This document shows positions 13,301 through 54,409 of a stretch of 64,000 nucleotides of DNA, in pieces. The position numbers and the translations under genes are program-made. The notes under the pieces were generated by a model that ran no database searches, was not told the DNA's origin, and saw nothing but the letters and a program-made list of their open reading frames with translations. The stretch is from positions 267,655 to 331,654 of the IMG/VR virus record IMGVR_UViG_3300023174_000039; one strand, 5' to 3'. How positions within the stretch are numbered: the stretch's first letter is position 1; the number at the start of each line of letters is the position of its first letter.

Positions 13301-16300
13301 ACTACCAACTGATCCTGGAGCCACCTGAAGTTTGTTGCCCGGTGCAGCCGAGGCAGGATTTTTAACAGCAATAGTCAGGTATCCTTTAGATACACTGGCC
13401 ACAACGTTTGGTACAGTTTCTGTAATAGACTGTGCTAGACGTTGCAGGCTTGTTTGTTCAGCGGTGGGAAATAAAATTACAACGTCTTGATTGTTGACTC
13501 GTAGAGTATGTCCGGGTGTCAACACCGGATCCTGGTTTAAAGACACTGTGCTACCGTACACACGGCTTTGATTTACATTGCGTTGTACACTTCCAGACTT
13601 CCAGCCATCTGTGCTGTCTTGTGGAGCACCAACATACAAACTGCAACTGTACACACAGATGTCTACAGATTGTCCAAAGTTAGTGTATTCAGTCACAGTA
13701 TTTTTGGTAATCTTTTGCATCTGTGTGAACTGGTTGGTTTCAATCTCAATTACATCGCCAGTTTGTAGATCAGAGTTAATGGTGATATCATTGCCGCTGA
13801 CAGTGAAACTATTTGAAGCTCCAATGATACTGTTGTTTTGGTTTACCAAGAATACATTATTAACAATAACACTTACAGGTGCAGTAACAGTTCCTAGTAC
13901 TGTGAACATGGTTGAGCTTGGATCAGTTCCGTAATCAAACCGCTGAACGTTGCGATCAAACACATACACACTACCAGCATCAACCTTGCCACTGATGTCT
14001 TCGTCTTTACATCCAATAATGACTTGTCGGCCATCAACTGTGGTAGTGACACTATAGCCAAACTGTGCATCGGCTGCTAGTCCGGCAACAGTCAATGTGT
14101 TAACATATTCAAAATAACTCTGAGCTTGTACTGAAATTAAGGTACCTGCGGCAGGATTGTTAACAAATGTCATGTCCTGTGTGCTGGTATTAAATGTGTA
14201 ATCGATACCTGGACGTTGTAACACAGTATCAACATATACAGAGAATGAATAGATGTTATCAACTGTGAAGAAATATTCATTTAGAGAAAATGTTGATGTT
14301 AGTGTAACAGGAGTGTATGCAATATTAAATGTTTCAACTTTTCCACCTGCGCCCACAGATACCACTGTTAGCACTAAATTTGCTTGGCCGCCAAACTTGC
14401 TGGCTGCAAAAGTTATTGTATTTCCTACTGCATACCCAGTACCACCAGCAGTTACACCTACACCTCCTGAGATACTGCCTGGTTGTCCAACTTCATTACG
14501 AACTCGTCTGATAGTAAACTTAGCGCCTGTGCCTGAACCAGAAGTTGATGTTTGAGCAACGTTATAGTAATTGCCGCCATCAATAATTTTATTGTTATAA
14601 CGGTGAATGTCAACCAACACACCAACTGCTGGCGCTGTTGCAAATGTCACTGTGGCCAATCCTGAGTCAACTGTGTAGTCTGTACCAAGTAATTGTTGTG
14701 TTCCGTCGAGTGTTACCAACAGCTGAGTAGCAGTGTTAATTTGTATAGTTTGAGCTATGCTAAAAGATTTGGTGACTCCATCTCCTCTAGATTTAACAAA
14801 TTGATCTTGCCAGTCTACTCGACCGTATGCATATACTTTGTTGGCAGCAGGTGCTCCTATGTATACCCAGCGTTCATCAGTGCTGATTGCTACGCTGTGT
14901 CCAAATAATCCTGATTCAGTGTTGTTGGGTGATACCAACAACTGCCACGATACATAGGGAATTACACCCGGTTTGCCAAGATTTGGATCACGATAAATTA
15001 TCGCGGCGTATCCAACATCTGCTTGGCTGGCAGGACCAAGACTCTTGCTTGCACCAGCAACTGCCCATGTTTGGTTGCCAAATTCCACGGCATTTCCAAA
15101 TCCGCGAGCGCCGGTAGTGTCAAGAGTTAAAACAGCATCTCCGTTGGCCACTGGACTTACAGGTGCATACTGATCGCTGTAGTTTTTAACATAAACATAC
15201 ACAGCACCTTTTTCTGCACCAGTTGGGAATCCGTAGCGTGGGCTACCTACCAAAGCGGCAAATCTATTACGGGCCTGTGACACGCTCTGTCCATACTGCT
15301 CTGTGGCATCTAGTAATTTAGGTGACAACTCAATCACTGTTGAAAACTGATTTTCTTTTTGTAAAACTTCCCAATGCCCTGTTCCGTCATTGTCTACCCA
15401 TAACTTAGCACCTGTTTGAATATCATTTGCATAAGGTAGATTTATAATGTCACTGGCCTGTCTCACACGTTGAGTTTTTAATGTAAATCCAATACCAACG
15501 CCGTTGATAACTGTTTGGCCACCAGGGGTGAATGTATATGCAATAGTAACACGGTTAATACCTTGAACAGTTAGTACTTTGTATACACCATCAATTCTTG
15601 TGTCAAATTGTTTGATGATCAGTCGATCGCCAACTGACAAACCGTGTGGCTTGGTAAAGTTTACAATTGATGTTCCATCTAGGTTGTCACACACGTGGTC
15701 AATAAAACCTGGAATGTTGACGCAACGATAAATGTCCCAGTCGTAGTTGTTGACCTTGGCCACCCATACGGTGGCACCAACACTCACCAATCCTAAATTG
15801 GCAGCAATAGTAGATCTTGTTCCGAGATCAAAAGTAGCAATGTCAGCATCTTCAAGATTGACATATCCTGCATTTGGCAATGCAGTATCAGTTACTTGTG
15901 TGATTGTGGTAGGCAAAAAGTCTGGAGAAGTCAATTTATAACTTTGTCTCCAGACATTGTCTAATAAAATAGTCTGGTCTGCTTGACTTTGTTCTTGTGG
16001 TTGAATAACTTGTACTAAACTTGGATTTGCACTTAGCAATGCACGATTTAGTTTTAGTTCAACAAAACTGCGGTTAGCATTGGCTCCGTATACTGCACGT
16101 TGTACCGCCCAGTTTTCATAGATCTGATAGTCTGCAGATTCTTTACCAAGATTAGCATTGCTCAACAACTCTGCTGAAAGAATTGTGCCTTTGGTGCCCA
16201 AAAACTGTGAATAAACATTTACCTGGCTGACATCATCCAAATTCAGTGCTGCCATGTACTGGCGCGGACGGAATCCAATCAAGCCATAACTCAGCAAATC

Positions 16301-19300
16301 GTTGTCATTCTCAAGATTGGCACTGTTGATACTGTATGAATTTTGTAATTGGTTGGCCTTGTTTGAGATATTGGGCAATAATCCCAATGCAATCTGATTG
16401 TAATCGCTCTTGACCCACTTGTTGAAATCAAAGTCAGTACTGGGATCAACAATGACCTGCGCACTCCAATACTGGTCTTTGTACTTGACAATTTGTCCTT
16501 TGCTGTACTTCTTGAGACCAGACCATTCTTCAACATTGTCTTGGTTTAGAATGAAACCTTGTGCATCCACAGTGCCATTCCACTCAGTGGTTGTTACACC
16601 AACAAAATTCAATCGGCTTTGTCTAGCACCTGTAATTGGTTGATATATTAAATCTCCAAACACTGATTGATTGTTCAACACAATCATGTGTTCAAAATTT
16701 GTGAATCTTAAATCAGCAAAACTTAAACTTTGATCAGTCAATGGCTGTAATGTCAATGTGTTATCAAGACGAACAATATTGATATTACGAGCAGGCAGCT
16801 CACGTTTGTTTTGATCTAGTATGACATTCTCGCTGGTCTGTGTGACAATGCTGTCAACCACTGCGCCTGGTTTGGTAATTGTCAACGCACTGGCCAGTGG
16901 GTTGAGATTGATCAGGCAATTGTTTTCCCATCCTTGCTGACTCCAATACAAGAACTCAACAACCATCTGGTCCCAGTCTAACTGATAGCCGTTGACTCTG
17001 TCATCAAACGTGAGTCCTTGATCTGTTAGTAGTTTGCCATAGCTCAACAAGAAATCACAAACACTGGTTTGGTTAGTAAACACATACCCATAAGGAACTT
17101 GTGCCACTGTATTTGTATAAGTGGTAGGGACTCTCACAGTAACATCGCCAACTGTATATGGCTTTAATCTACCAGCTGACTGGCTTACTAAAATATTAAA
17201 GTACGGCTGAGTGGTTGAATATCCATATACAGCATAACCGCCTTCAACAATTTGTATCACAACTGAGCTATAAATTAGTCGATCAAATGGCTGATTTTTG
17301 TACAGCAACAAATCATAACTTTCGTCAGGAATCAACAATGTTGCATTCAAGCTGTTGGGGCTAGATTTTTCTGTGTATAATTTGATATACTGTTTGTCGG
17401 AATAACTAGCCAGTCTATAGCACAAGCGAACATCAATGCTGGCAAGATCTGCTTCAAGGGCAGAGGTGCTGTTTATACCAGTGATACGATTATAGTCCAC
17501 AATCCAGTTAATAAAACTAGCTTTGCTTGTGCCGTCACCGTACACTTGTATGCCATTGGCATCAAGTCGATACCGGTCATTGTAAAGAAATTGATCAAAC
17601 TCTGCCTGATAACGATATAAATCTCTATCAGCGTACAGTGCGTAAAACTTAGCTGGAATTGTCAATGCATACAATCTCATGACAGCAAATGGATAAGCAC
17701 TAGAGTTCCGCCATGATGATTCAACAGGACTACCGTCGCCGGCACTCCAACTCTTTTGAAATGTTGTTTCGTTGTAGTTGCCAACTACACATTCAAACGG
17801 GCTTACTAAATTGCCTTCAGTATCAACTGGTATCACTTGAGTGAGTCCTGGACGCACATAGGCTGGTAGTACATATGTTCCTGCTGGATCTGCTACAATA
17901 CCTGCTTCTAAATCATCCCATAGCACCATGTTTTCAGATGTGTAAGGTCCTACACCATATACAGTTTCCCACCAGGTTGGTTTGATACTGAATCCCAGCA
18001 TCTCCCAAGGAGTTTTGGCAGGATCTTGTGTGTCATAAAAGTATCTATAGATGCCACGCCAGGAGCCAATTAAGTTTTGACCAGTAGATAGTTTGTTTTG
18101 TGATCCACTATAGTTCCAGGAGAATTCGTTGTTTACAATATAATTTTGTGTGTTGTAATCAAGTTTGTTCCAGCCCACATAACTTAAAAAATCAACATTC
18201 AATATGGAATTAATTTCTTGTGATGAGTAACCGGTGTTGCGGAATTGTCCAGGAATAACATCACTGGCATTGATAGGCACTGGGTTGCCATCAAGTTTCA
18301 AGTTGTTGTAGATTCGAGTTTCAAACTCAAGTAACACTTGGTCTCGTACGTCACCAAATACTGGGGTTTGACTACCATCATGCCCAATGATAACTTCGCT
18401 GGAGCCGGATGTGGTGTCAATTGCAGTTATTACTGGACGGAATGTTGGGTACAGACCCATCTTGGTAGGAGTGTTTGGAACAAAACTTCCGTAAGTCGCT
18501 GAGTATTCTTGAACAGAGATAACATCGCCAATGGCCAATGGCACAAGTACTGTAATGCGTGGGCCATCTGTAGCAACAGTATAATCAATGCCACGAGTTA
18601 GTAATGCTTTGTTTTTGTAAACTAACAGTCCCAGATAGTTAGATGATGTATAATTGTAAACTTGTACTGTATCAAATACATTGGTTGTGATCAAACTTAC
18701 TGTGTAATTGTTTTCAATGTACACTGACCCTGATGGCAACATGTCTGACCAATAGAACGGATTAGATTCTAATCGTCCCAGAGTAATGTTGGCCATGGCC
18801 TCTACCAATATCTCTGCAGGAGTTTCTGTGTACAAAGTTAAATTGGTAACTTCGTTCATCAATAAGTCTTTGAACTTTTGGTATTCTCGCGAATTGTACT
18901 GCAAGGCAGCAAAAATATTATATTCTTTACTACGATTAAAATATCCAGCCAGTGTCAACGGACTACTTTGTTGTAGGATAATCAATCCATAAGGGCCAAT
19001 GTTTCCAAGGTCTCGAGTGTTGTTGGCACCATTGATTTTACCAGACAGTGTAATTAAGTTTTCACATATGGATTCGTAATGCGTACGAATGGTACCCAAA
19101 GTGAATACATCGCTGTTGCCATTGAGCGGGTTGTTCTCCAAATTGATAGGCACTTGATAAAATGCCACTTGACTTGTTTGGTCGCTTAACACCAATACTT
19201 CCACAATATCGCCAATGGCATAGGTATTATCCAACGTGATAGTAGATGAGTTAGACGTGGTTTCTAAAGTGTATGTTCCTGGATCTTTAAATTTACTACC

Positions 19301-38026: not shown

Positions 38027-40104
38027 TCCAAATTAAAAACTTGACTGTTAAAAACTTCATGAGTGTGGGCAATGCCACACAAGGTATTGACTTTGACCGT
38101 AACGACCTTACACTTGTGCTGGGCGAAAACTTGGATCTAGGCGGTGACGGATCACGCAATGGCACAGGCAAGACCACTATCATTAATGCGTTGAGTTATG
38201 CTTTGTATGGACAAGCACTATCAAACATTCGCAAAGATAATCTTGTGAACAAAACCAACGGCAAGAATATGTTGGTTAGTCTAGACTTTGTTGTGAACGG
38301 GCAAGAATACAAGATCGAACGTGGGCGCAAACCCAATGTGTTGCGGTTTTATGTCAACAATCAAGCGCAGGTATCTACAGACGAAGCGCAAGGCGATAGT
38401 CGAGAAACACAAGATGCAATTGAACGGATTATGAATATGAGTCATGACATGTTCAAACATGTGCTGGCGCTAAACACTTACACCGAACCGTTCTTGAGTT
38501 TAAAAGCCAATGACCAGCGCAACATAATCGAGCAGTTGTTGGGTATCACTTTGCTGAGTGAACGTGCAGATGCCATCAAAGAACTTAATCGACAGACCAA
38601 AGATGGCATCAGTCAAGAAGAATTTCGTATTCGTGCTGTGCAAGAAGCCAACAAACGCATCGAAGAACAGATTGAAAGTTTGAAACGCAGACAAGTACTC
38701 TGGCAGAAGAAGTACGATAGTGATGTAGCATATCTCGTGGCACAATATGATGATCTAGACAAGATTGATATTGAAGTAGAATTACTAGCTCACAAAGATC
38801 TGGCCTTGTGGACCACAAGAAAACAACAACAAGATGCGTATACTGCACTTGTTGGTCGCCAAACTGCTTGGAAGCAAAAACAACAAAAAGATATCAGTGA
38901 GTTGGAATCAGGTTACAACAATCTCAGTCACATTGACATTACTGCAGAACTACAAGCACATGCGGACTTGGCTGCTCACACACAACAAGCCAAGGACATT
39001 GCTGACCTTGAAAAACTCATTGCTAGATGTGTTACCGACGAGGCAAAAGAACAGAAAACAATTGATAAGCTCAAAACCGAAATTGATGAATTAAAAAATC
39101 ACAAGTGTTATGCTTGTGGGCAAGACTTTCACGACGCCAATCATGAAACAGTGCTAGCAACAAAAGAAAAGGCTCTACAAGAAGCCGCACTGCAAGCATT
39201 GAGTACCAATGGTCAGTGGATAGAAAATACAGATGCATTGGCTGCATTAGGTGTGCTAGGTACCAAACCCACCACACACTACCGTACAGAAACAGAAGCA
39301 ATTCGACATTCAAGTGAACTAGAAAATATTCAACACAAGATTGATGCCAAACGTGCAGAAACAGATCCCTATGCTGAACAACTAGCAGAACATGCCCTTG
39401 TAGAAGTCGGCACACAACCTGTTACACATTACGACACAGAGGCTCAAGCTGTTGAGCACCGCAGTCGTATGAACACATTGCTGACACAGATTGCTACCAA
39501 AGGTGAAGAGAAGGATCCTTACACAGAACAGATTGTTGAAATGCAACAACAAGCATTGCAGACTGTGAGTTACGATACACTCAACGATCTTACCAGATTG
39601 CAAGATCATCAAGACTTCTTGCTCAAACTATTGACATCAAAAGATTCATTTGTGCGCAAGAAAATTATTGATCAGAACTTGAGTTACCTGAACGCACGAC
39701 TCACACACTATCTAGATCGCATTGGATTGCCACACACTGTGAAGTTCCAGAACGATCTAAGTGTAAGCATTGAAGAACTGGGTCGTGAACTAGATTTTGA
39801 TAACTTATCACGTGGTGAACGCAATCGATTAATCTTGAGTATGTCATGGGCCTTCCGTGACGTATGGGAAAGTCTGTACTCACCAATCAACTTGTTGTTT
39901 ATTGACGAGTTAATTGACAACGGTCTAGACACACAAGGCGTAGAAAATGCCCTGGCTTTGCTGAAGAAGATGAGTCGCGAACGCCACAAGAGTATCTGGC
40001 TTGTAAGCCATAGAGACGAGCTTGCAGGGCGTGTGGAAAACATTCTCAAAGTTGTAAAAGAGAATGGCTTTACCAGCTACAACACCGACATAGAACTGGC
40101 ATAA
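38023..40104 (+). CDS. gp46: Recombination ATPase gp46 (Rad50/SbcC)
   Basis: Walker A NGTGKTT, zinc hook CYAC, signature LSRGE, Walker B LFIDE, VSH. Confidence 0.95.
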   Translation: MIQIKNLTVKNFMSVGNATQGIDFDRNDLTLVLGENLDLGGDGSRNGTGKTTIINALSYALYGQALSNIRKDNLVNKTNGKNMLVSLDFVVNGQEYKIERGRKPNVLRFYVNNQAQVSTDEAQGDSRETQDAIERIMNMSHDMFKHVLALNTYTEPFLSLKANDQRNIIEQLLGITLLSERADAIKELNRQTKDGISQEEFRIRAVQEANKRIEEQIESLKRRQVLWQKKYDSDVAYLVAQYDDLDKIDIEVELLAHKDLALWTTRKQQQDAYTALVGRQTAWKQKQQKDISELESGYNNLSHIDITAELQAHADLAAHTQQAKDIADLEKLIARCVTDEAKEQKTIDKLKTEIDELKNHKCYACGQDFHDANHETVLATKEKALQEAALQALSTNGQWIENTDALAALGVLGTKPTTHYRTETEAIRHSSELENIQHKIDAKRAETDPYAEQLAEHALVEVGTQPVTHYDTEAQAVEHRSRMNTLLTQIATKGEEKDPYTEQIVEMQQQALQTVSYDTLNDLTRLQDHQDFLLKLLTSKDSFVRKKIIDQNLSYLNARLTHYLDRIGLPHTVKFQNDLSVSIEELGRELDFDNLSRGERNRLILSMSWAFRDVWESLYSPINLLFIDELIDNGLDTQGVENALALLKKMSRERHKSIWLVSHRDELAGRVENILKVVKENGFTSYNTDIELA

Positions 40105-41114
40105 TGTTAGCTACTTGGCACTTTCACATTGAGATCTCCAGCAAGTGTACCTTGCAGTGTCCTCGTTGTGCTCGTCAAGAAGTACCCAACAGTCTTGTGA
40201 ATACAGAACTAGACCTAGAATTTTTTAAACGTAATTTTACTCCAGAGTTTATCAAAAACAATGTAGAGAAGATTACGTTTTGTGGCGACGATGGTGATCC
40301 TATATATGCACATGATCTAATTCCTGTTATAGAATATATCAAAAGCGTCAAACCTGTTGAGTTTGTGATTGTCACCAATGGATCGCATAAAAAAACTGCA
40401 TGGTGGACAGAACTAGGCCAATCTCTAGATTCCAGCGACAGTGTGCATTTTAGTGTAGACGGATATGACAATGACAGCAATAACCTGTATCGTGTCAACA
40501 GTGATTATGATAGTGTTGTTGATGGCATAAAAACTTTGCGAGCATCAAGCGATTGCAAGATTGTGTGGGCCGCTATTGCTTTCAAATTCAACGAAGAACA
40601 ATTAGACTCCATGAAAGAGTTTGCACAATCTATAGGTGTTGACCGGTTCCAGTTAACCAAGAGTACCAAATTTGGCAGTGTGTATCCTTCATATGGCATA
40701 AACGATCCATTGCAACCCAGTGTAAAATACATTAGCAGTACTCACCGATTTGAACGTGAGGCAACGGTGTTTACAGATACAGGATCCCAAGACTCTGTAT
40801 CCCAGACAAACATACAATTATTCAAACAAACAACAAGTCGCAATGGTATTACTCCATTGTGCATGATAGGCAACAAAGGACTGTACATTGATGCCCGCGG
40901 CAGGTTATTTCCCTGCTGTTGGGTAGCTAACCGATACAATCACAATTCAGACTGGCAACAACAGGCAACAAACTTTGATTTACACAACAAAACATTAATC
41001 AATGTACTTGCAGATACATTTTGGTCTACAGAATTTCAAACATTCAAGTGGCAAGAATGCCAAAGCAAGTGCAAAACTTCAGTAGTAGACGAGAAATACG
41101 CAACTTCTTGGTAA
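40104..41114 (+). CDS. Radical SAM protein with C-terminal Twitch/SPASM-like cysteines
   Basis: CTLQCPRC, TFCGDDGDP, VTNG, C-terminal LC...FPCC...C...C. Confidence 0.88.
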   Translation: MLATWHFHIEISSKCTLQCPRCARQEVPNSLVNTELDLEFFKRNFTPEFIKNNVEKITFCGDDGDPIYAHDLIPVIEYIKSVKPVEFVIVTNGSHKKTAWWTELGQSLDSSDSVHFSVDGYDNDSNNLYRVNSDYDSVVDGIKTLRASSDCKIVWAAIAFKFNEEQLDSMKEFAQSIGVDRFQLTKSTKFGSVYPSYGINDPLQPSVKYISSTHRFEREATVFTDTGSQDSVSQTNIQLFKQTTSRNGITPLCMIGNKGLYIDARGRLFPCCWVANRYNHNSDWQQQATNFDLHNKTLINVLADTFWSTEFQTFKWQECQSKCKTSVVDEKYATSW

Positions 41115-41154: not shown

Positions 41155-41583
41155 ATGACATGGCTATATCAAGATACCCCAATTGAGATGTTGCCCGATG
41201 AGTGTGTTGGATTTGTTTACTTGATTACAAATAATCTCACTGGACGCAAGTACATAGGCAAAAAATTAGCAAAATTTAGCAAAACAACATACAAGACAGT
41301 TAAGCAAAAGAATGGCATCAAGAAGAAGAAAAAGATACGATCAAAGGTCGACTCAGACTGGAGAGAGTACTATGGGTCAAGCCCAGAATTAACTTCAGAC
41401 GTAATCAAACTAGGCACCGAAAACTTTACCAGAGAAATACTTTTTTATTGCAACTCTAAATCGGAATGTAGTTACATTGAAGCAAGAGAACAATTTGCAA
41501 GAAGAGTATTAGAATCACAAGATTATTACAATGGCCACATACAAGTGCGTGTGCATGGCAGTCATATTATAGGCAAATTATGA
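41155..41583 (+). CDS. Compact GIY-YIG family nuclease
   Basis: GFVYLITNNLTGRKYIGKK, YYGSS, YIEAREQ, YYN; 142 aa with no appended DNA-binding domain. Confidence 0.85.
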   Translation: MTWLYQDTPIEMLPDECVGFVYLITNNLTGRKYIGKKLAKFSKTTYKTVKQKNGIKKKKKIRSKVDSDWREYYGSSPELTSDVIKLGTENFTREILFYCNSKSECSYIEAREQFARRVLESQDYYNGHIQVRVHGSHIIGKL

Positions 41584-42316: not shown

Positions 42317-42877
42317 TTAAACAGTTACTCCAAGTTCAAGTAGTTTAGCAATAAAGAACTTTTCTCCATTGGATACAGATTGTTTCCAAGAGTCATGAGC
42401 TTGATCATCTGCTTGATCAGTAATGTATTTGAAGCAACGGAATTTGACCTTGTACCGTAAACATGCCTTGGCAATTGCATATGCCTCCATATCAACTACG
42501 TCTGCAGGTATGTCAAGTTTGGGATTCATCACAAAGTTATCTCCGGTACTGCATGTGAGTCCATTGGTACCTGTGCTCAGTATGATATCATCTTCAAATG
42601 GAGTTTGTCCGTCTGCACATCCCATGGCCTGACACGTGATATCTCTTTGTACAAATTGAGTACATTCATGTAGACCGGGACCAGCAGTAATACCACCTGC
42701 TGTGCCTATATTGATAATGCGATCTGGTTGATAACGTTCGATCACTTGTGCGGCAGTTAATGCCGCATTGACCTTGCCAACCCCGGTATAGAACACATTC
42801 ATCATGTGTCGTAGGTTAGGAGCCTCGCTGGGCAAGGCTATCAAGATCACAGTTTTCATACAAAGGTATCTGGCCAA
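42317..42877 (-). CDS. mtnN: 5'-methylthioadenosine/S-adenosylhomocysteine nucleosidase (PNP/UDP family)
   Basis: ALPSE, TGVGKVNAA, IINIGTAGG, STGDNF, VDMEAYAIAKAC, KYITD. Confidence 0.8.
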   Translation of the reverse strand: MARYLCMKTVILIALPSEAPNLRHMMNVFYTGVGKVNAALTAAQVIERYQPDRIINIGTAGGITAGPGLHECTQFVQRDITCQAMGCADGQTPFEDDIILSTGTNGLTCSTGDNFVMNPKLDIPADVVDMEAYAIAKACLRYKVKFRCFKYITDQADDQAHDSWKQSVSNGEKFFIAKLLELGVTV

Positions 42878-43191
42878 TCACGGAACAATGCGTGTTGAAT
42901 TGTTCCTGACACAAATTGATTGAAACTTTTGTGTTTGACTTCTAGTTCACCTGCAAGAGGTGCAACACGTTTGAATGCCAAGTCCATTTGGCCCATGTCT
43001 TTGAACTCCATCAAGATCATCCATTCTGGCATGTTGGCAATACTTCTAAAGCCCATCTTGCATCTGGTAATGCGATAGTCTTCTAGTTTGCCTTCTGATT
43101 TCAAATGATCAAAGAAACTCTTCATGCCGTTAACCCAGTCCAAGTCTGAGATGTCGCCTTCTTTATCTGCCCAAATTGTGTAAATGTCCAT
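42856..43191 (-). CDS. DUF6614-like small protein
   Basis: MDIYTIW, ITRCKMG, MEFKDMGQMDLAF, HALFRDWPD pattern recalled from that family. Confidence 0.55.
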   Translation of the reverse strand: MDIYTIWADKEGDISDLDWVNGMKSFFDHLKSEGKLEDYRITRCKMGFRSIANMPEWMILMEFKDMGQMDLAFKRVAPLAGELEVKHKSFNQFVSGTIQHALFRDWPDTFV

Positions 43192-43622
43192 TATAGTGGT
43201 CCTAGTATTTCAAAACCTTCAAGGTCCTGTTTATACAGATGTGCCTGATCCAAGTACAGGTACTGGAATCCGCGCTCTCTGTAGATTGCACATTCTGTTT
43301 GTAAGCTCGTAATACCCAACCGTAGTCGGGGCTTGCGATAGTTCCAAGCAAATTGTGCGGCTAATAAATTTTTGTCGTCGTAACGTTTCATTATTGAAAA
43401 CGCTGCCAGTTCGCCGTTGTCTCGGTATCCTATTAGATCCACACCTGGTTCTGTAAATTGGCTGTCAAACAACGGCATCACACTGGCAAAGTGTTTGTAG
43501 GTACAATAGGTTCTGTATATGTCCTGTAGTTCTGCAATATTGGGCTGAGTGATATAAAACCAGTCAACTGTGGGTTTGTATGTTGTTTTTTCCAAATTGA
43601 TTCTAGCAAACTGATAGGTCAT
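43191..43622 (-). CDS. ATE_C-like aminoacyl-tRNA-protein transferase / GNAT-fold protein
   Basis: ELQDIYRTYCTYKH, YRDNGELAAFS, LRLGITSLQTE, RGFQYLYL, YK....FEIL parallel ATE/Bpt C-domain motifs. Confidence 0.6.
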   Translation of the reverse strand: MTYQFARINLEKTTYKPTVDWFYITQPNIAELQDIYRTYCTYKHFASVMPLFDSQFTEPGVDLIGYRDNGELAAFSIMKRYDDKNLLAAQFAWNYRKPRLRLGITSLQTECAIYRERGFQYLYLDQAHLYKQDLEGFEILGPL

Positions 43623-44122
43623 GTTCTTGGGTCTTTTCTATGTTGAAATAAGCCAGTGAGATACTCTTCGGGCCAGGTGTCATAAAATCCTCGCTTGGCC
43701 ATTAACTGTGCTTTTGAATCAAGATCGCTCAGACTTTGTACTAATGCAAGCGCATATGTACCTTGATTCATACAGATTCCGTTGACAATTTCAACATCGT
43801 TGGGATGATCTTCAAGTGTTAACAAATCTGCATTTAACAAAAAATCTCTGTTGGCCTGATCTAAGCTACTTGCAAACAGGTCGTGTGGCCATTCTTTAGG
43901 ATCATATGCATACACAATAACTTCTTTGTCGCCCATGCCATACCGGGCACGATTTTTAAGATCAAAGTAAGGATCAGCACCAATGAACACATCGTAGCTG
44001 TTTTTGAGTCTTGAGCTACGAGCATATGGGCAAGGAGGGAAGTTGCCCAGGGCAGGATGCGGAACTTCTACAAAGTTCACAATCCACTGCTCAATATCTC
44101 GTTTAACTTGATCTATATCCAT
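43619..44122 (-). CDS. DUF1415-like protein
   Basis: QWIVNFV...PPCPYA, EDHP, ALVQ pattern. Confidence 0.45.
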   Translation of the reverse strand: MDIDQVKRDIEQWIVNFVEVPHPALGNFPPCPYARSSRLKNSYDVFIGADPYFDLKNRARYGMGDKEVIVYAYDPKEWPHDLFASSLDQANRDFLLNADLLTLEDHPNDVEIVNGICMNQGTYALALVQSLSDLDSKAQLMAKRGFYDTWPEEYLTGLFQHRKDPRT

Positions 44123-44355
44123 TAGAAGAACGGTAGTTTGCTGTTTTTAGTTGTTTCAAGATTGTCTTTGATTAACTCACTGATCATCTGACGTTCATGA
44201 TGACTCATGTTCATAACATCATCATAACTGGCTCCGCCACGCATGTACCACGACATTTTTAAGCCTTGACGTCTTAGGTCACTGGCCTCCTGGTCCATCC
44301 TGTCTACCATAGCAGAAATCTGCTCAGCTGACGAAATCAGGAGGCGGTTTCGAAA
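44122..44355 (-). CDS. Tail assembly chaperone C-terminal (frameshift) extension
   Basis: Frame stays open well upstream of the track's ATG 44310 (FRNRLLISSAEQISAMVDRMD...SWYMRGG); reachable by a -1 shift at 44352-44358. Confidence 0.65.
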   Translation of the reverse strand, partial: FRNRLLISSAEQISAMVDRMDQEASDLRRQGLKMSWYMRGGASYDDVMNMSHHERQMISELIKDNLETTKNSKLPFF

Positions 44356-45179
44356 AAACTTGCTTGATCCAAATTCATTGATTGTTCATAGTTGTTATTA
44401 CAAGCCGAACAGGTTATTTTGATAGGTGCCAGTTCGCTAGCAGATCTAAGTTCAATCACACGATCTCGTATTTTGCTAAACAAGTTACGATCGCAGTTGT
44501 TTAGAAATTCATGAATAAATTCTGGTTCAGTTACCAGGGCTTGCGGAGTTCTAATACTGGCAATGTTAAATTTCATGGCATCAATAGTTAGCTCGGTGAT
44601 GTGTTTTAATGCCGCATTGAGCTTGGCAATTTTTTCATCATCGGACAAATCTGATCCAGGGATGGCACGAATCATGCGCTGTTCTTCAAACTGCATTTGA
44701 TTGGTATCGTTTTGATCTTTGTAGGTCACTGGATGAAATGCTATTTCTAAATCTCTGTGTTTGATAGTATTTGAGTAGTCCGGGGCTGAAATTTGGTCTA
44801 GTATGTTGCGCAAATCGATATCGTATTGATCTTCGTTTTGACATTTTGGGCAAGTGGTGCTGATGCCCATGTTGTGTCCGTAACTGGCAATACGAATAGC
44901 AACCAAAATAGCATTGATGTCAACATTGGGGGCTAGCCATGCATTTTTAATAGCAGGAATACAGCTCTGGATTACAGAAATCACAGCTTGACCGTTGAAC
45001 AAGGCATCTGGTGTGCGGTAAGTGATTTCGTCAATGGCAGTCATGGGAAGCACTGGCAATTCTTTGTTTTGCGGCATAGCAAGAGTGTCCGGTGCCCAGT
45101 ATTCGCCACCAGAAGGCAGTCTCAAGTAAATTGCAGGTTGTCTAAAAAATTGTCTTAAGGGGTTAGCAGTTTGGGTCAT
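44337..45179 (-). CDS. Tail assembly chaperone / gp26-like baseplate hub assembly protein
   Basis: NPLRQFFRQPAIYLRLPS, PMTAIDEI...TPDALFNG, IRIASYG, CPKC and CSAC pairs. Confidence 0.7.
   Translation of the reverse strand: MTQTANPLRQFFRQPAIYLRLPSGGEYWAPDTLAMPQNKELPVLPMTAIDEITYRTPDALFNGQAVISVIQSCIPAIKNAWLAPNVDINAILVAIRIASYGHNMGISTTCPKCQNEDQYDIDLRNILDQISAPDYSNTIKHRDLEIAFHPVTYKDQNDTNQMQFEEQRMIRAIPGSDLSDDEKIAKLNAALKHITELTIDAMKFNIASIRTPQALVTEPEFIHEFLNNCDRNLFSKIRDRVIELRSASELAPIKITCSACNNNYEQSMNLDQASFFETAS
44352..44358 (-). promoter_or_regulatory. -1 ribosomal slippery heptamer T TTT TTC
   Basis: Minus strand AGT TTT TTC GAA in the 44337..45179 frame; -1 frame TTT TTT CGA AAC is the downstream ORF frame. 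Confidence 0.7.
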
Positions 45180-48518: not shown

Positions 48519-50294
48519 ATGGCAGAAAAACAATCCCCCGGCTGGAAAAAATATTTCAAAGTGGCAGACACCACAGGTCAATTAGGACCCATCTCCGGCC
48601 GCTATGCTGATGGATATCCTCAGTATGGCAAGAACAACGGCACAGACAATTACCCTGCAGACATGGTTTATCGTAACTATGCCAGCCGATTGCCAGAAGT
48701 GTATTCAGGTCATCCCAATCGTATTGAGCGTTATAATCAGTACGAAAACATGGACATGGACTCAGAGATCAATGCCTGCTTGGACATTATTGCTGAGTTT
48801 TCTACTCAGCCAAACGAAACAAACGGCACACCATTTGAAGTAAAATATTCTGACACTCCTACTGATCATGAAATTGATATTATCCGCAAGCAGTTGCAAC
48901 AGTGGGTGAAACTGAACAAACTGGATCAACGTATCTTCAAGCTATTCCGTAACACTGTGAAGTACGGGGATCAAATCTTTGTGCGTGATCCAGAAACATT
49001 TGAAATGATGTGGGTAGACATGACCAAGGTGGCTCGTGTGATTGTGAATGAAAGTGAAGGAAAACGTCCTGAACAGTATGTAATTCGCGATATCAACCCC
49101 AATTTTCAAAACATGACTGTGGCAGCCAAGACTACCACAGACTACATGACTAACCCTGTTACAGGCTCAGTATCTGGTTCCAGTAACTACACCATGCCCA
49201 ATGGTGGCACAGGTGGTGGCGTGGGCAACAGCCGTTTCATGCAGGCCATGAACGAAGTTTGTTTGGATGCCAAGCACGTGGTGCACATGAGCTTGAACGA
49301 AGGACTTGATGTGTTTTGGCCATTTGGCAAAAGCATCTTGGAAAACATCTACAAAGTGTTCAAGCAGAAGGAATTGCTGGAAGACTCAATTCTTATCTAT
49401 CGTGTGAGTCGTGCTCCAGAGCGTAGAATCTTCAAGATTGACGTGGGCAACATGCCCAGTCACTTGGCCATGCAGTTTGTGGAACGCATCAAGAACGAAA
49501 TGCACCAGCGTAGAATTCCCACTGTAACAGGCGGCGGCCAAAACATGATGGATGCCAGTTACAACCCACTCAGTATCAATGAAGACTACTTCTTCCCACA
49601 AACAGCAGACGGTCGCGGATCAAGTGTAGACACCCTGCCAGGTGGACAGAACCTGGGCGAAATTGACGACTTGAAGTACTTTAACAACAAAATGGCCCGT
49701 GGCTTGCGTGTGCCTTCAAGCTATTTGCCCACAGGTCCTGACGATTCGGGCAAGACATTTGACGATGGCAAAGTAGGCACAGCACTCATACAAGAGTACA
49801 GATTCAACCAGTATTGCGAACGTTTGCAAGCATTGATCTGTCAAAAGCTAGACGACGAATTCAAAATGTTCATGAAATGGCGTGGGTTTAACATAGACTC
49901 TAGCCTGTTCAACATCAAGTTTAATGCACCTCAAAACTTTGCAAGTTACCGTCAAAGCGAACTGGACAACACACGTATTCAAGCATTTACCAGCTTAGAA
50001 CCCTTGCCATACATGTCAAAACGTTTTATGCTAGAACGCTTCCTGGGCTTGACCGAAGACGAAATCAAGAAGAACGAAGAGTTATGGCGTGAAGAACGTG
50101 ACGACCCAGAAATGAAAGCTGCCACAGGACAAGACCTGCGTTCAGTAGGCATCACTCCTGGTGCACTAGAAACTGACATCCAAACAGGTGAAGATATTGG
50201 ACAAATGACTCCAGCAGGCCCTGGCGGTATGCCTGGTGCGGCTGTTCCTCCTGCCCCAGGCGGCCCAGGCGGTGCCGCACCTCCACCAGTATAA
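48519..50294 (+). CDS. gp20: Portal protein gp20
   Basis: EDSILIYRVSRAPERRIFKIDVGNMP, EDYFFP, TLPGGQNLGEIDD, LRVPSS. Confidence 0.95.
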   Translation: MAEKQSPGWKKYFKVADTTGQLGPISGRYADGYPQYGKNNGTDNYPADMVYRNYASRLPEVYSGHPNRIERYNQYENMDMDSEINACLDIIAEFSTQPNETNGTPFEVKYSDTPTDHEIDIIRKQLQQWVKLNKLDQRIFKLFRNTVKYGDQIFVRDPETFEMMWVDMTKVARVIVNESEGKRPEQYVIRDINPNFQNMTVAAKTTTDYMTNPVTGSVSGSSNYTMPNGGTGGGVGNSRFMQAMNEVCLDAKHVVHMSLNEGLDVFWPFGKSILENIYKVFKQKELLEDSILIYRVSRAPERRIFKIDVGNMPSHLAMQFVERIKNEMHQRRIPTVTGGGQNMMDASYNPLSINEDYFFPQTADGRGSSVDTLPGGQNLGEIDDLKYFNNKMARGLRVPSSYLPTGPDDSGKTFDDGKVGTALIQEYRFNQYCERLQALICQKLDDEFKMFMKWRGFNIDSSLFNIKFNAPQNFASYRQSELDNTRIQAFTSLEPLPYMSKRFMLERFLGLTEDEIKKNEELWREERDDPEMKAATGQDLRSVGITPGALETDIQTGEDIGQMTPAGPGGMPGAAVPPAPGGPGGAAPPPV

Positions 50295-51450: not shown

Positions 51451-52083
51451 ATGAAAACACTAAGAGAACAGCTTACCTTTAATCAGGCCAACATCCAAGT
51501 GTTGGAGGAATCCGACATGACTGGGGGCAAGCATCTCTATCTTAAAGGCATTTGTATTGAAGGCAACAAGCGCAATGCAAATGAACGTGTCTATCCTTTA
51601 CACGAAATAACCAAGGCAGTTAACACAATTAATCAACAGATTAAAGAAGGTAACTCTGTTTTAGGTGAAGTGGATCACCCAGATGATTTGAAAATCAACC
51701 TGGATCGTGTGTGCCACAGCGTTGAAGGCATGTGGATGGATGGAGACGCCGGATGTGGTAAACTTAAAATTTTGCCAACTCCAATGGGAGAATTGATCAA
51801 GACGTTGCTACAATCTGGTGTTAGACTAGGTGTATCAAGCCGTGGAAGCGGCAACGTTGATGACAGAACAGGACATGTAAGTGACTTTGAAATTGTCACT
51901 ATAGATGTGGTTGCACAACCCAGTGCTCCGAATGCTTATCCCAAAGCAATTTACGAAGGACTCATGAACATGAAGTACGGACATAGATTGCTGGAAGTGG
52001 CTCGTGAATCTGGGCAAGACAACAAAGTGCAGAGATACCTCAAGGATGAAGTTAAAAAGCTCATCCGGGATCTCAAAATATAA
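51451..52083 (+). CDS. gp21: Prohead core protease gp21
   Basis: NANERVYP, LGEVDHP, PTPMG, LGVSSRGSG, DVVAQPSAPNAY. Confidence 0.95.
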   Translation: MKTLREQLTFNQANIQVLEESDMTGGKHLYLKGICIEGNKRNANERVYPLHEITKAVNTINQQIKEGNSVLGEVDHPDDLKINLDRVCHSVEGMWMDGDAGCGKLKILPTPMGELIKTLLQSGVRLGVSSRGSGNVDDRTGHVSDFEIVTIDVVAQPSAPNAYPKAIYEGLMNMKYGHRLLEVARESGQDNKVQRYLKDEVKKLIRDLKI

Positions 52084-53212: not shown

Positions 53213-54409
53213 ATGTCAGAACCATTGTTAGAAAGTCGCTGGGGCGAAACCAAAGAAGCATTGCTCGAAGGTTTGAACGGTACCCGTCGCAATTCCATGA
53301 GTGTGATCCTTGAGAACACACGCAAGTACTTGAAAGAAAATGCATCCGCAGGTTCCACAAGTTCCGGCAACATTGCCACATTGAACCGCGTGATTCTTCC
53401 CGTGATTCGACGTGTTATGCCAACCGTTATTGCTAACGAGTTGGTTGGTGTTCAGCCAATGACTGGTCCAGTTGGTCAGATCCATACTCTGCGTGTACGT
53501 TATGCACAGAGCTTGACTGATACATCAGCAGCCGCAACCAGCGTCACAGCTGGCCAAGAAGCCCTGAGCCCATTCACTATTGCTACTGCATACTCTACAG
53601 TACCAAGAGACACAGCTACAGCTACATCATATACTGGTAACAACACAGCAGTGATGGAAGGCAACGGCGGTAAGCAAATTTCCGTCCAAATCTTGAAGCA
53701 AGCTGTTGAAGCCAAGACTCGCAAATTGCAAGCTCGTTGGACATTTGAATCTGCACAAGACGCACAAGCCATGCACGGTATTGACGTTGAAGCAGAAATC
53801 ATGGCTGCTTTGGCTCAAGAGATCACAGCTGAGATTGACCAAGAGATCTTGTTATCTCTACGTAGTCTGGCTGCTACTGAGTTCACATACAACCAAGCTA
53901 CTGTATCAGGTACAGCCACATTTGTTGGTGACGAACATGCCGCATTGGCTGTTTTGATCAACCGTGTTGCTAACTTGATCGCCCAACGTACACGTCGTGG
54001 CGCTGGTAACTACGCTGTTGTATCTAGTGCCGCATTGACAGTGTTGCAATCTGCAACTACTAGCGCATTTGCACGTACTACAGAAGGTACTTTTGAAGCT
54101 CCTACAAACACCAAGTTTGTGGGTACATTGAACGGCGCTATGCGTGTGTTCGTTGACTCTTATGCCAGTGACACAACACCTGTGTTGGTTGGTTATAAGG
54201 GCTCTTCAGAAGCTGACGCTCCTGCATTCTACTGCCCATACATTCCATTGATGAGCAGTGGTGTTGTGTTGGATCCATCAACATTCGAACCAGTCGTGAG
54301 CTTCATGACGAGATATGGTTACATAGAATTGACAAACACCGCATCGAGTTTTGGTAATGCGGGCGATTATGTTGGCGAGATCGCCGTGAGTAATTTGTCT
54401 TTCAGTTAA
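53213..54409 (+). CDS. gp23: Major capsid protein gp23
   Basis: LVGVQPMTGPVGQI, VEAKTRKLQARWTFESAQD, EITAEIDQEI, FYCPYIPL, FMTRYG. Confidence 0.97.
   Translation: MSEPLLESRWGETKEALLEGLNGTRRNSMSVILENTRKYLKENASAGSTSSGNIATLNRVILPVIRRVMPTVIANELVGVQPMTGPVGQIHTLRVRYAQSLTDTSAAATSVTAGQEALSPFTIATAYSTVPRDTATATSYTGNNTAVMEGNGGKQISVQILKQAVEAKTRKLQARWTFESAQDAQAMHGIDVEAEIMAALAQEITAEIDQEILLSLRSLAATEFTYNQATVSGTATFVGDEHAALAVLINRVANLIAQRTRRGAGNYAVVSSAALTVLQSATTSAFARTTEGTFEAPTNTKFVGTLNGAMRVFVDSYASDTTPVLVGYKGSSEADAPAFYCPYIPLMSSGVVLDPSTFEPVVSFMTRYGYIELTNTASSFGNAGDYVGEIAVSNLSFS

What the first reader, a model, noticed from the sequence alone, without database searches (positions are those of the whole stretch)
43191..43622. 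Phage-encoded minimal aminoacyl-tRNA-protein transferase-like (ATE_C/Bpt-like) enzyme
Seen: motif series E..DIY..Y...KH / YR.NG.LAAFS / LG..SL..E...RG..YLYL / YK....FE.L. Established: this parallels the C-terminal GNAT-like domain of Arg-tRNA-protein transferase and bacterial Bpt, which add a destabilising residue to N-terminal Asp/Glu for N-degron proteolysis. The N-terminal ATE domain is absent here. Inference: the phage may tag host or phage proteins for ClpS/ClpAP turnover, or aminoacylate another acceptor. gp21-type cleavage generates new N-termini during head maturation.
Basis: partly seen in the sequence, partly recalled or inferred. Interest (0 to 1): 0.7.

Follow-up and report, generated by a model that had tools for sequence, protein, structure and literature searches.

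The report
Phage arginyltransferase-like core with haem partner
A freshwater jumbo phage carries a stripped-down relative of the enzymes that move an amino acid from a charged tRNA onto another molecule, and this gene almost always sits next to a small protein resembling newly described cysteine-ligated haem hydroxylases, which points to an uncharacterised two-enzyme, probably arginine-based, modification module in phages.

Summary
Window 43191..43622 (minus strand) is a 143-aa ORF. Its family profile hits only yeast ATE1 in the PDB (E 1.5e-8). Its AlphaFold model (pLDDT 94.5) matches bacterial Bpt in all top 30 Swiss-Prot hits (TM about 0.8, Bpt residues about 65-227). The FemX/ATE1-type catalytic Lys (K131), Y130 and W93 are conserved. 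So is E110, the equivalent of ATE1 Glu277, which binds arginine and is Gln in Bpt. ATE_N is absent from the protein and from the whole 331-kb phage genome.

In 153 of 172 related loci the gene lies next to a 167-aa protein (43619..44122), here with a 4-nt overlap. That protein has an invariant Cys-Pro. It belongs to the DUF6875 ("cytochrome P422")/DUF1415 group, and its only clear solved match is AglA, a thiolate-haem hydroxylase of an arginyl compound. In argolaphos biosynthesis AglA follows AglC, an Arg-tRNA-dependent ligase.

Best reading: a stand-alone aminoacyl-tRNA transferase core, probably arginine-specific, working with a haem-thiolate enzyme on an unknown acceptor. A classical N-degron role is possible but unsupported. 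No biochemistry exists. This is a new variant of a known kind.

The parts
43191..43622 (-). 143-aa ATE_C/Bpt-like aminoacyl-tRNA transferase core (P0001), the 'short form' without ATE_N
   Evidence: ORF. Pfam ATE_C E 4e-4. Family profile hits ATE1 only, E 1.5e-8. AF2 pLDDT 94.5. All top 30 Swiss-Prot AFDB hits are Bpt, TM 0.72-0.82.
43230..43235 (-). Codons of Y130-K131, the equivalents of klAte1 Tyr303 and Lys304 (FemX Lys305, the catalytic lysine)
   Evidence: Mapped through the HMMER alignment (chain index minus 4 gives klAte1 numbering) and PMC9351520. K is present in 201/208 short and 84/85 long family members.
43293..43295 (-). Codon of E110, the equivalent of klAte1 Glu277 (binds the Arg side chain; Gln189 in Bpt)
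   Evidence: Alignment and paper text. Glu is present in 200/208 short and 82/85 long members.
43619..44122 (-). 167-aa partner protein (P0246) with invariant C31-P32 and D105-H106-P107. It is a putative thiolate-haem protein of the DUF6875 (P422)/DUF1415/AglA-like fold. Its stop overlaps the transferase start (ATGA).
   Evidence: Adjacent in 153/172 loci. Alignment A4. AF2 pLDDT 96.3. DUF6875 matched by 22/28 members, best 9.7e-7. AFDB cluster hits to DUF6875/DUF1415. AglA (9ub3) Z 7.5 with the next hit at 4.2.
42856..43191 (-). 111-aa DUF6614 protein. Its start overlaps the transferase stop by 1 nt. It is a likely third member of the module; function unknown.
   Evidence: Pfam DUF6614 E 8e-22. 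Directly downstream on the same strand in 82/87 short-form loci, and within 3 kb in 36/84 long-form loci.
42317..42877 (-). MTA/SAH (5'-deoxyadenosine-type) nucleosidase-like gene at the end of the same transcription unit. Membership of the module is doubtful.
   Evidence: PNP_UDP_1 E 9.7e-20. NCBIfam nucleosidase E 1.7e-30, under its cut-off. Within 3 kb in only 8/87 short and 4/84 long loci.

Best explanation
The ORF encodes a stand-alone catalytic GNAT core of the ATE1/Bpt family of aminoacyl-tRNA transferases. It keeps the donor side of the enzyme: the fold region that binds the tRNA acceptor arm and 3' end in ATE1, the conserved Trp and Tyr, the FemX/ATE1-type catalytic Lys, and an amino-acid pocket carrying the ATE1-type Glu. 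It has lost the N-terminal domain that in ATE1/Bpt holds the Cys/metal site and recognises N-terminal Asp/Glu. I infer that it takes a basic residue, most likely Arg from Arg-tRNA(Arg), and forms an amide bond with the amino group of an acceptor that is not defined by the classical ATE_N pocket. I further infer that it works as one step of a conserved phage module with the translationally coupled 167-aa protein upstream. That protein is predicted to be a cysteine-ligated haem monooxygenase of the P422/AglA type, which would oxidise (for example N-hydroxylate) the acceptor or the arginyl product. This is the same logic as the AglC (Arg-tRNA-dependent ligase) then AglA (thiolate-haem N-hydroxylase) steps of argolaphos biosynthesis. 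DUF6614, and in some relatives an arginine-type amidinotransferase, are frequent further members. Shown: homology, fold, residue conservation, absence of ATE_N, gene linkage. Inferred: tRNA dependence, arginine as donor, haem binding, functional coupling. The acceptor is unknown; it could be a small amine, a protein N-terminus or something else.
For: Homology and fold are shown. Catalytic and donor-side residues are conserved in 293 distinct sequences, mapped through and PMC9351520. PMC10115844 states that the GNAT subdomain is the main tRNA-binding site in ATE1 and that aminoacyl-tRNA transferases diverge in their acceptor-sensing domains. No ATE_N is found in the 95%-complete genome. The gene is linked to p167 in 153/172 loci: co-directional with a 4-nt overlap, convergent and overlapping, divergent, or downstream on the same strand, and in several different genomic contexts. 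p167 is the most constant neighbour of the long forms (67/84, against at most 44/84 for any other gene). For p167, the DUF6875/DUF1415 relationship is shown, and AglA is the single outstanding solved match. Its invariant Cys-Pro corresponds to the Cys-Pro of the P422 haem-binding motif RxGxVCP and to the axial Cys of AglA. The precedent for the pairing is that AMPn-Arg is made with ArgRS, tRNA and AglC, then hydroxylated by AglA, and the argolaphos cluster holds GNAT-superfamily aminoacyl-tRNA ligases. The arginine theme is supported by an AGAT/SxtG/StrB1-type amidinotransferase (E 5.6e-23) within 3 kb of the transferase in 14/87 short and 11/84 long loci, directly adjacent in several. The phage carries its own tRNA-Arg(TCT) and tRNA-Arg(TCG) among 24 tRNAs.
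Against: There is no biochemical datum for any family member. This protein alone is under the Pfam ATE_C cut-off (21.4 versus 25 bits). The amino-acid pocket is a hybrid (A88, S106, E110, L122, against ATE1 S/S/E/Y and Bpt A/A/Q/L), so arginine is not assured. Much of the linkage lies in one conserved slot (baseplate gene, 62-aa gene, p167, transferase, DUF6614) of related jumbo phages, so shared descent explains part of it. p167 reaches DUF6875 only weakly by sequence (17.3 bits versus 24.5), and its match to AglA is structural only (no YqcI_YcgG sequence match). I could not verify that C31 superposes on the axial Cys. No ferredoxin gene was found in the phage, so a host redox partner would be needed. 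Seventeen divergent long-form loci lack p167, and distant p167-like genes occur without the transferase. The amidinotransferase has four paralogues elsewhere in this genome, so its adjacency in relatives may be incidental.
Confidence: 0.55

Rival explanations
1. Classical N-degron enzyme. This would be a minimal Bpt/ATE1 that adds Leu or Arg to N-terminal Asp/Glu of host or phage proteins, possibly new N-termini made by the gp21-type protease, so that ClpS/ClpAP degrades them. p167 would replace ATE_N as the acceptor- or cofactor-binding part.
For: The closest relatives by sequence and fold are Bpt and ATE1. The long-form relatives keep an N-terminal extension whose nearest named Atlas clusters are ATE_N (score 0.86, a lead only). 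ATE1's N-terminal Cys cluster binds metal and the enzyme is inhibited by haemin (PMC9351520), so a separate haem/Cys protein could be a trans-acting analogue. A gp21-like protease lies 8 kb away.
Against: The residues that recognise acidic N-termini (klAte1 Arg80, Tyr25, Tyr87) lie in the domain that is absent. No ATE_N is found anywhere in the genome. The long forms lack the Cys ligands and the GFRRSG-type motif. No Pfam ATE_N hit was obtained for any of the long forms scanned. The partner family resembles small-molecule amino-acid hydroxylases, not protein-binding modules. No clpS or clpA context was seen.
Confidence: 0.2
2. An ordinary acyl-CoA-dependent GNAT (N-acetyltransferase or acyltransferase) that merely descends from the ATE_C branch, for example one modifying a metabolite, antibiotic or host protein.
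For: By geometry alone, CoA-using GNATs (VipF Z 14.2, N-myristoyltransferase Z 14.1) score nearly as high as MprF (14.9) and FemX (14.2). One family member also matches Acetyltransf_6.
Against: Sequence-aware searches give only ATE_C/ATE1/Bpt. The FemX/ATE1-type Lys-Tyr pair and the Trp implicated in tRNA binding are nearly invariant. The canonical CoA-pyrophosphate motif Q/R-x-x-G-x-G/A is not present at the equivalent loop; the sequence there reads R101-L-G103-I-T-S106 (read directly).
Confidence: 0.1
3. A counter-defence or regulatory module in which the transferase-like protein is a binding protein or pseudoenzyme rather than a catalyst.
For: The coupled downstream gene is DUF6614. A preprint reports that a phage ORF predicted as DUF6614 has anti-Druantia type I activity (10.1101/2024.04.14.589459). 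The locus sits in a variable slot next to a SegE-type homing endonuclease.
Against: The catalytic Lys, the pocket Glu and the Trp/Tyr are conserved across sequences down to about 25% identity, and dN/dS is about 0.04. That pattern is expected for an active enzyme. No PADLOC or defence evidence was gathered for this gene itself.
Confidence: 0.1

Closest known systems
Bacterial Bpt (aspartate/glutamate leucyltransferase; ATE_N + ATE_C, about 235-275 aa)
   Same: It is the best structural match: all top 30 Swiss-Prot AFDB hits, TM by query 0.72-0.82, with phage residues 1-141 on Bpt residues about 65-227. The two share the GNAT core, the LG loop and the C-terminal YK...F.E motif.
   Different: The phage protein lacks the first 65 or so residues (ATE_N, with the Cys motif and the acceptor pocket). 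At the position of Bpt Gln189 it has Glu, as in ATE1. It is virus-restricted in the collections searched.
Eukaryotic ATE1 arginyl-tRNA-protein transferase (7WFX/7WG1, 7TIF, 8E3S)
   Same: ATE1 gives the only significant PDB sequence hits for the family profile (E 1.5e-8). Conserved equivalents are W260/W93, G270/G103, S273/S106, E277/E110, Y303/Y130 and K304/K131.
   Different: [quoted passage not shown] Of the four ATE1 pocket residues, two (Ser273, Glu277) are kept and two (Ser255, Tyr289) are replaced by Ala and Leu, as in Bpt.
AglC/AglA of argolaphos biosynthesis (an Arg-tRNA-dependent ligase followed by a YqcI/YcgG thiolate-haem N-hydroxylase)
   Same: The pairing is the same: an aminoacyl-tRNA-dependent transferase with a small cysteine-ligated haem 'sandwich'-fold protein. 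AglA is the only solved structure clearly matching p167 (Z 7.5, 148 residues aligned). The chemistry centres on arginine.
   Different: This is an analogy of logic, not shown homology of the pathway. I could not obtain the AglC sequence or its family, and p167 has no YqcI_YcgG sequence match. The acceptor (aminomethylphosphonate) and the phosphonate genes are not present here.
Cytochrome P422 (DUF6875) tryptophan hydroxylases, and DUF1415
   Same: 22 of 28 p167 family members match DUF6875 (best 9.7e-7) and 4 match DUF1415. Foldseek TM is 0.51-0.58 to DUF6875/DUF1415 models. A Cys-Pro sits at the haem-ligand position.
   Different: p167 is shorter (about 167 aa against 180-300 aa). It does not carry the full RxGxVCP motif or the Trp-binding motifs SBR1-3 described for P422. 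Its own invariant set (D105-H106-P107, N119, Y147, W150, R162) is different.
Other aminoacyl-tRNA-dependent GNAT transferases (MprF/aaPGS, FemX, Sba18/Sbb17, L/F-transferase)
   Same: These are the top Foldseek and VIA-align PDB matches. The mechanism class is shared: a lysine-stabilised transfer from the tRNA 3' ester to an amine or hydroxyl.
   Different: Those enzymes have two GNAT-like lobes or extra domains, and show no sequence-level similarity to this family. The phage protein is a single 143-aa lobe.

Membership tests
ATE1/Bpt aminoacyl-tRNA-protein transferases | ATE_C domain recognisable by sequence profile | tested here: met
   This protein alone scores E 4e-4, 21.4 bits, under the 25-bit cut-off. 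At family level, 39/47 members match at E<=0.01, best 1e-12. The long forms pass the cut-off. The family profile hits only ATE1 in the PDB, E 1.5e-8.
ATE1/Bpt aminoacyl-tRNA-protein transferases | GNAT-type fold superposable on Bpt/ATE1 | tested here: met
   The AF2 model has pLDDT 94.5. All top 30 Swiss-Prot AFDB hits are Bpt, TM 0.72-0.82. ATE1 chains are among the Foldseek PDB hits at E 1.6e-5.
ATE1/Bpt aminoacyl-tRNA-protein transferases | Catalytic Lys (klAte1 K304 / FemX K305) with the preceding Tyr, and the Trp implicated in tRNA binding (W260) | tested here: met
   K131, Y130 and W93 were mapped via and PMC9351520. Each is conserved in more than 96% of 293 sequences.
ATE1/Bpt aminoacyl-tRNA-protein transferases | ATE_N domain (Cys/metal site; Arg80/Tyr25/Tyr87-type pocket for N-terminal Asp/Glu) | tested here: not met
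   The protein starts at the equivalent of Bpt residue 65 or so. No PF04376 match at E<=1 anywhere in the 331-kb genome.
ATE1/Bpt aminoacyl-tRNA-protein transferases | Amino-acid pocket diagnostic of the donor (ATE1 S255/S273/E277/Y289 for Arg; Bpt A168/A185/Q189/L201 for Leu) | tested here: inconclusive
   The phage has A88/S106/E110/L122. The charged Glu and one Ser are as in ATE1, and the other two are as in Bpt.
ATE1/Bpt aminoacyl-tRNA-protein transferases | Transfer of an aminoacyl group from aminoacyl-tRNA to a protein N-terminus | not testable with these tools
   This needs an in vitro assay with charged tRNA and acceptors.
Acyl-CoA-dependent GNAT acetyltransferases | CoA pyrophosphate-binding motif Q/R-x-x-G-x-G/A in the beta4-alpha3 loop | tested here: not met
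   The equivalent loop reads P98-R-L-R-L-G103-I-T-S106, with no R/Q-x-x-G-x-G/A. The fold alone does not discriminate.
Cytochrome P422 (DUF6875) / DUF1415 / AglA-like thiolate-haem proteins (for the partner, 43619..44122) | Family profile match | tested here: inconclusive
   P0246 scores 17.3 bits against a 24.5-bit cut-off. 22/28 members match DUF6875 at E<=1, best 9.7e-7, and 4 match DUF1415. There is no YqcI_YcgG match.
Cytochrome P422 (DUF6875) / DUF1415 / AglA-like thiolate-haem proteins (for the partner, 43619..44122) | Alpha/beta 'sandwich' fold with a four-stranded central sheet | tested here: met
   AF2 pLDDT 96.3. AFDB cluster hits to DUF6875/DUF1415, TM 0.51-0.58, and to unnamed relatives, TM 0.72-0.75. 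AglA 9ub3 scores Z 7.5 over 148 residues, with the next hit at 4.2.
Cytochrome P422 (DUF6875) / DUF1415 / AglA-like thiolate-haem proteins (for the partner, 43619..44122) | Conserved axial Cys (Cys-Pro in P422) near the N-terminus | tested here: inconclusive
   C31-P32 is invariant in 28 diverse members and lies inside the stretch that aligns to the start of the DUF6875 profile. Superposition on the axial Cys could not be checked because no coordinates are available to scripts.
Cytochrome P422 (DUF6875) / DUF1415 / AglA-like thiolate-haem proteins (for the partner, 43619..44122) | Binds b-type haem and shows a reduced-CO Soret shift | not testable with these tools
   This needs the purified protein and spectroscopy.

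The most novel reading that the evidence does not exclude
Jumbo phages of lakes and seas carry a self-contained tRNA-dependent modification pathway. A minimal ATE/Bpt catalytic core uses Arg-tRNA to arginylate a non-canonical acceptor (a small amine, a nucleic-acid or cell-envelope precursor, or a protein). A coupled thiolate-haem enzyme of the P422/AglA type then oxidises the guanidino or amino group. The product would be a hydroxy-arginyl, or with the amidinotransferase a further guanidino-modified, compound during infection. This would be the first tRNA-dependent, non-ribosomal aminoacyl-transfer chemistry assigned to a virus, and a new evolutionary use of the N-degron enzyme fold.
Probability: 0.3. 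Interest if true: 0.8.

Novelty: new variant of a known kind. Interest (0 to 1): 0.62.

Why it matters
ATE1/Bpt enzymes are known only as N-degron writers of cells. Here thousands of virus-borne relatives (2,532 in the protein collection; one ESM Atlas cluster alone has 3,698 members, 99% viral) have lost or degraded the acceptor-recognition domain. They have kept the donor and catalytic side, and they are tied to a haem-thiolate-like protein from families whose chemistry was described only in 2025. If the module is active, phages use host or their own charged tRNA for chemistry other than translation. The ATE fold would then have been re-used much as the FemX/MprF/AglC-type enzymes are in natural-product pathways. 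The finding also gives a small, well-folding pair (143 and 167 aa) for dissecting what the GNAT core alone contributes to aminoacyl-tRNA transfer.

Tried and rejected
1. Complex prediction of the transferase (A2) with p167 (A4) scored 0.00 with no verdict. This is evidence neither for nor against binding.
2. The INPHARED phage collection gave no DNA or protein match to the transferase. Only four distant p167-like hits were found, in HMO-2011 and roseophages, without a transferase.
3. I searched for a split ATE_N elsewhere in the genome and found none.
4. I searched for a phage ferredoxin (Fer2) and for a YqcI_YcgG sequence match and found none.
5. I tried to fetch bona fide DUF6875 and ATE_C genes from 81 and 41 cyanobacterial genomes for profile-profile comparison. 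None was found, so no hhalign against P422 or Bpt could be run.
6. The genome-contig scan with the long-form profile gave one locus only, in Oscillatoria sp. PCC 10802, with a decayed transferase remnant. The pattern-based scan has limited sensitivity, so 'virus-restricted' holds only for what was searched.
7. The search for related loci with the mixed alignment A1 failed for lack of a conserved stretch, so I split it into A2 and A3.
8. PDB phmmer with the single protein gave nothing significant.
9. The JACS 2022 argolaphos paper (PMC9284158) is not held, so the family of AglC could not be confirmed.
10. No RNA runs hold this DNA, so expression was not examined and read laying was not used.
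11. I considered that the 'three independent gene arrangements' prove functional coupling. I downgraded this after one search showed that many long-form loci are the same syntenic slot with the transferase gene inverted.
Full report
**1. The observation.** Window 43191..43622 is a single minus-strand ORF of 143 aa. The gene belongs to a tight run of minus-strand genes with overlapping stops and starts:
- a T4-type baseplate hub gene, 44337..45179 (Pfam T4_baseplate 1.1e-14; PHROG 'baseplate hub');
- a 62-aa ORF;
- a 167-aa ORF, 43619..44122, whose stop overlaps the start of the finding (ATGA);
- the finding itself;
- a DUF6614 gene, 42856..43191 (1-nt overlap, E 8e-22);
- an MTA/SAH-nucleosidase-like gene.

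The window is the last 64 kb of a 331,654-bp IMG/VR virus record estimated 95% complete. The phage is a jumbo myovirus. Its portal is 49-53% identical to those of Sinorhizobium phage Phosso and the Pseudomonas PA5oct group. It occurs in lake and other freshwater metagenomes.

**2. What the protein is.**
- Alone it matches Pfam ATE_C at E 4e-4, just under the curated cut-off. It matches nothing in PHROGs, NCBIfam or, as a single sequence, the PDB.
- It has 2,532 relatives in the 5.8-billion-protein collection, nearly all 143-144 aa and unnamed.
- Among 50%-identity representatives it has 124 relatives. These include 'long forms' of 225-268 aa that pass the ATE_C cut-off.
- A 47-sequence alignment (A1) used as a profile finds only yeast ATE1 structures in the PDB (E 1.5e-8; the next hit is at 0.34). 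39 of the 47 members match ATE_C individually (best 1e-12).
- The AlphaFold model is confident (pLDDT 94.5).
- Foldseek against Swiss-Prot models returns Bpt (aspartate/glutamate leucyltransferase) for all top 30 hits. TM by query is 0.72-0.82, aligning phage residues 1-141 with Bpt residues about 65-227.
- Against the PDB, the first Foldseek hits are aminoacyl-tRNA-dependent enzymes: MprF/aaPGS, Sba18/Sbb17 and ATE1.
- A geometry-only re-ranking (VIA-align) puts MprF (Z 14.9) and FemX (14.2) first. CoA-using GNATs (VipF 14.2, N-myristoyltransferase 14.1) are practically level. The assignment therefore rests on sequence-aware evidence, not on fold alone.
- ESM Atlas neighbours are viral clusters automatically named 'ATE_C domain-containing' (one with 3,698 members, 99% viral). 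Databases already label the family, but I found no paper that discusses it.

**3. Residues.** I used the HMMER alignment to K. lactis Ate1 (chain index minus 4 gives the published numbering) together with the mutational data of PMC9351520. The phage equivalents are:

| klAte1 residue | Role | Phage residue |
|---|---|---|
| W260 | tRNA binding | W93 |
| G270 | – | G103 |
| S273 | amino-acid pocket | S106 |
| E277 | essential negative charge for the Arg side chain; Gln189 in Bpt | E110 |
| Y303 | – | Y130 |
| K304 | K304A is dead; equals FemX K305 | K131 |

Pocket residues S255 and Y289 are replaced by A88 and L122, as in Bpt. In 293 distinct family sequences, K131, Y130, W93, G103 and E110 are each conserved in more than 96% of both short and long forms. 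dN/dS is about 0.04. The classic CoA-binding motif Q/R-x-x-G-x-G/A is not present in the equivalent loop (read).

**4. What is missing.** The protein begins where Bpt residue 65 or so lies, immediately after the position of the Cys motif of ATE_N. No ATE_N profile match exists anywhere in the genome at E<=1. In ATE1 the residues that recognise N-terminal Asp/Glu (Arg80, Tyr25, Tyr87) and the zinc/Cys site are in that domain. According to PMC10115844, the GNAT subdomain is the main tRNA-binding surface, and aminoacyl-tRNA transferases differ chiefly in their acceptor-sensing domains. A stand-alone core is therefore expected to keep donor binding and catalysis and to need another way of choosing its acceptor. 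The long forms carry an N-terminal extension (consensus A-L-x-x-G-W ... W-Y-Q-S-R-S-T-R) without the Cys ligands. Its nearest named Atlas clusters are ATE_N, but at a score that is only a lead. The long forms also carry a C-terminal G-F-E-W-W-T-G extension.

**5. The neighbour.**
- In contigs carrying relatives of 41-76% identity, a 165-168-aa gene precedes the transferase with a 4-nt overlap.
- In a long-form contig the homologous 177-aa gene lies convergent and overlapping.
- I fetched 160 IMG/VR loci and called ORFs. With the loci fetched earlier that makes 172, and 153 of them have this '167-aa family' gene next to the transferase: 85/87 short-form and 67/84 long-form loci.
- Part of this is shared descent. 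Many long-form loci are the same slot (baseplate gene, 62-aa gene, p167, transferase, DUF6614) with the transferase gene inverted.
- The pair also occurs in other contexts and orientations, for example L152, L160, L144, L147 and L157. p167 is the most constant neighbour of the long forms.
- The 17 long-form loci without p167 are the most divergent. Several of them have a different 164-aa neighbour.

**6. What the neighbour is.**
- An alignment of 28 diverse members (A4) has these invariant residues: C31-P32-x-A34, D105-H106-P107, N119, Y147, W150 and R162.
- The model is very confident (pLDDT 96.3).
- Foldseek finds nothing in the PDB.
- In AlphaFold clusters it finds unnamed proteins (TM 0.72-0.75) and DUF6875 and DUF1415 proteins (TM 0.51-0.58).
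- 22 of 28 members match Pfam DUF6875 (best 9.7e-7) and 4 match DUF1415. Atlas neighbours agree.
- A December 2025 preprint shows that DUF6875 proteins are 'cytochrome P422'. These are cysteine-ligated b-haem monooxygenases that N- or C-hydroxylate tryptophan, with the axial Cys in an RxGxVCP motif.
- An exhaustive structural search of 48,161 PDB chains gives one match that stands out: AglA of Streptomyces monomycini (9UB3), Z 7.5 over 148 residues, with the next hit at 4.2.
- AglA is a YqcI/YcgG-family thiolate-haem enzyme with a 'sandwich' fold. It N-hydroxylates the guanidine of aminomethylphosphonate-linked arginine.
- That substrate is made from AMPn, arginine, tRNA, ArgRS and AglC, that is, by an Arg-tRNA-dependent ligase. 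The argolaphos cluster contains GNAT-superfamily aminoacyl-tRNA ligases.

A pairing of a tRNA-dependent arginyl transferase with a small thiolate-haem hydroxylase therefore has a characterised precedent. I could not verify that C31 superposes on the axial Cys. There is no sequence-level match to YqcI_YcgG.

**7. Further arginine-related context.**
- In some relatives (L002, L054, L064, L078, L145, L160, L144, L169, L004) a 350-450-aa gene lies directly beside the transferase. Its profile matches L-arginine:glycine amidinotransferase, SxtG, HsvA and StrB1 at E 5.6e-23 to 4e-18.
- It is found within 3 kb in 14/87 short and 11/84 long loci.
- The phage under study has no copy in this locus but has four paralogues elsewhere, so the adjacency may be incidental.
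- The phage encodes 24 tRNAs, including two tRNA-Arg and two tRNA-Leu. It has no ferredoxin.

**8. Interpretation.** The identification as an ATE_C/Bpt-type aminoacyl-tRNA transferase core is well supported; I put it at about 0.85. Arginine as donor rests on one conserved Glu and on context (about 0.5). A functional partnership with a haem-thiolate enzyme rests on linkage, remote homology and the AglC/AglA analogy (about 0.6). The acceptor is unknown. The classical N-degron reading remains possible but lacks its defining acceptor pocket. A plain acyl-CoA GNAT or a non-catalytic role is less likely, given the pattern of conserved residues.

**9. Distribution and novelty.** Both families are overwhelmingly viral in what was searched. 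One scan of 185,579 species genomes found a single locus, in Oscillatoria sp. PCC 10802. There p167 is intact and the transferase is a truncated remnant interrupted by stops. No isolated phage in INPHARED carries the transferase. I rate this a new variant of a known kind: a known catalytic domain in a new minimal architecture with a new, conserved partner. Everything beyond homology and linkage is inference and needs the assays listed under the next steps.

Noticed in passing
G000:C1 91857-92774, 167919-168932, 227522-228511, 251461-252483 (outside the window); L002:2800-3924, L145:4790-6001: The phage genome holds four paralogues of an AGAT/SxtG/StrB1-type amidinotransferase (profile E down to 4e-85 against A5). 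In some relatives one copy sits directly beside the transferase-like gene. An expanded amidinotransferase family in a phage is unusual.
   Followed up: partly
L173:8001-8246 (+) and L173:8206-8715 (-), Oscillatoria sp. PCC 10802 chromosome: This was the only cellular locus found. It has an intact p167 homologue convergent with a truncated long-form transferase remnant interrupted by stops, probably phage-derived DNA in decay.
   Followed up: partly
window 42856..43191 (-): The translationally coupled downstream gene is DUF6614 (E 8e-22). A preprint (10.1101/2024.04.14.589459) reports anti-Druantia type I activity for a phage ORF predicted as DUF6614. No test was done here.
   Followed up: partly
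window 42317..42877 (-), 40104..41114 (+), 41155..41583 (+): An MTA/SAH-type nucleosidase-like gene lies near a radical-SAM gene. Such nucleosidases remove 5'-deoxyadenosine, a radical-SAM by-product (my own knowledge). A SegE-type GIY-YIG homing endonuclease is also here. Relatives carry up to three radical-SAM genes in this area (L002).
   Followed up: no
window 7340..22150 (-): A single ORF of 4,936 aa, followed by ORFs of 1,155 aa and 1,100 aa on the same strand. These are presumably giant structural or fibre proteins and were not examined.
   Followed up: no
G000:C1 216868-225113 (outside the window): A cluster of 24 tRNA genes covering most amino acids, including Arg-TCT, Arg-TCG, Leu-TAA, Leu-TAG and three Met-CAT.
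   Followed up: no
L148:5914-6408, L151:4049-4537, L162:6665-7159, L166:6647-7153, L168:6633-7157: The most divergent long-form transferases lack p167. Instead they have a conserved 162-174-aa downstream neighbour with H-E-x-x-E-K ... H-H-I-A ... E-H-E motifs (metal-binding or peptidase-like in appearance). It has no Pfam match.
   Followed up: partly
L174:3495-4022 (Puniceispirillum phage HMO-2011), L175:3471-4043 (Roseobacter phage CRP-810): Distant p167-like genes (about 28% identity) occur in small isolated marine phages without any transferase-like gene. In CRP-810 the gene lies directly after a 2OG-Fe(II) oxygenase gene.
   Followed up: partly
window 48519..50294, 51451..52083, 53213..54409 (+): A T4-type head module: portal (Portal_T4, 7e-105), gp21-like prohead protease (Peptidase_S77, 7.8e-23) and gp23-type major capsid protein (1.2e-96).
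   Followed up: yes
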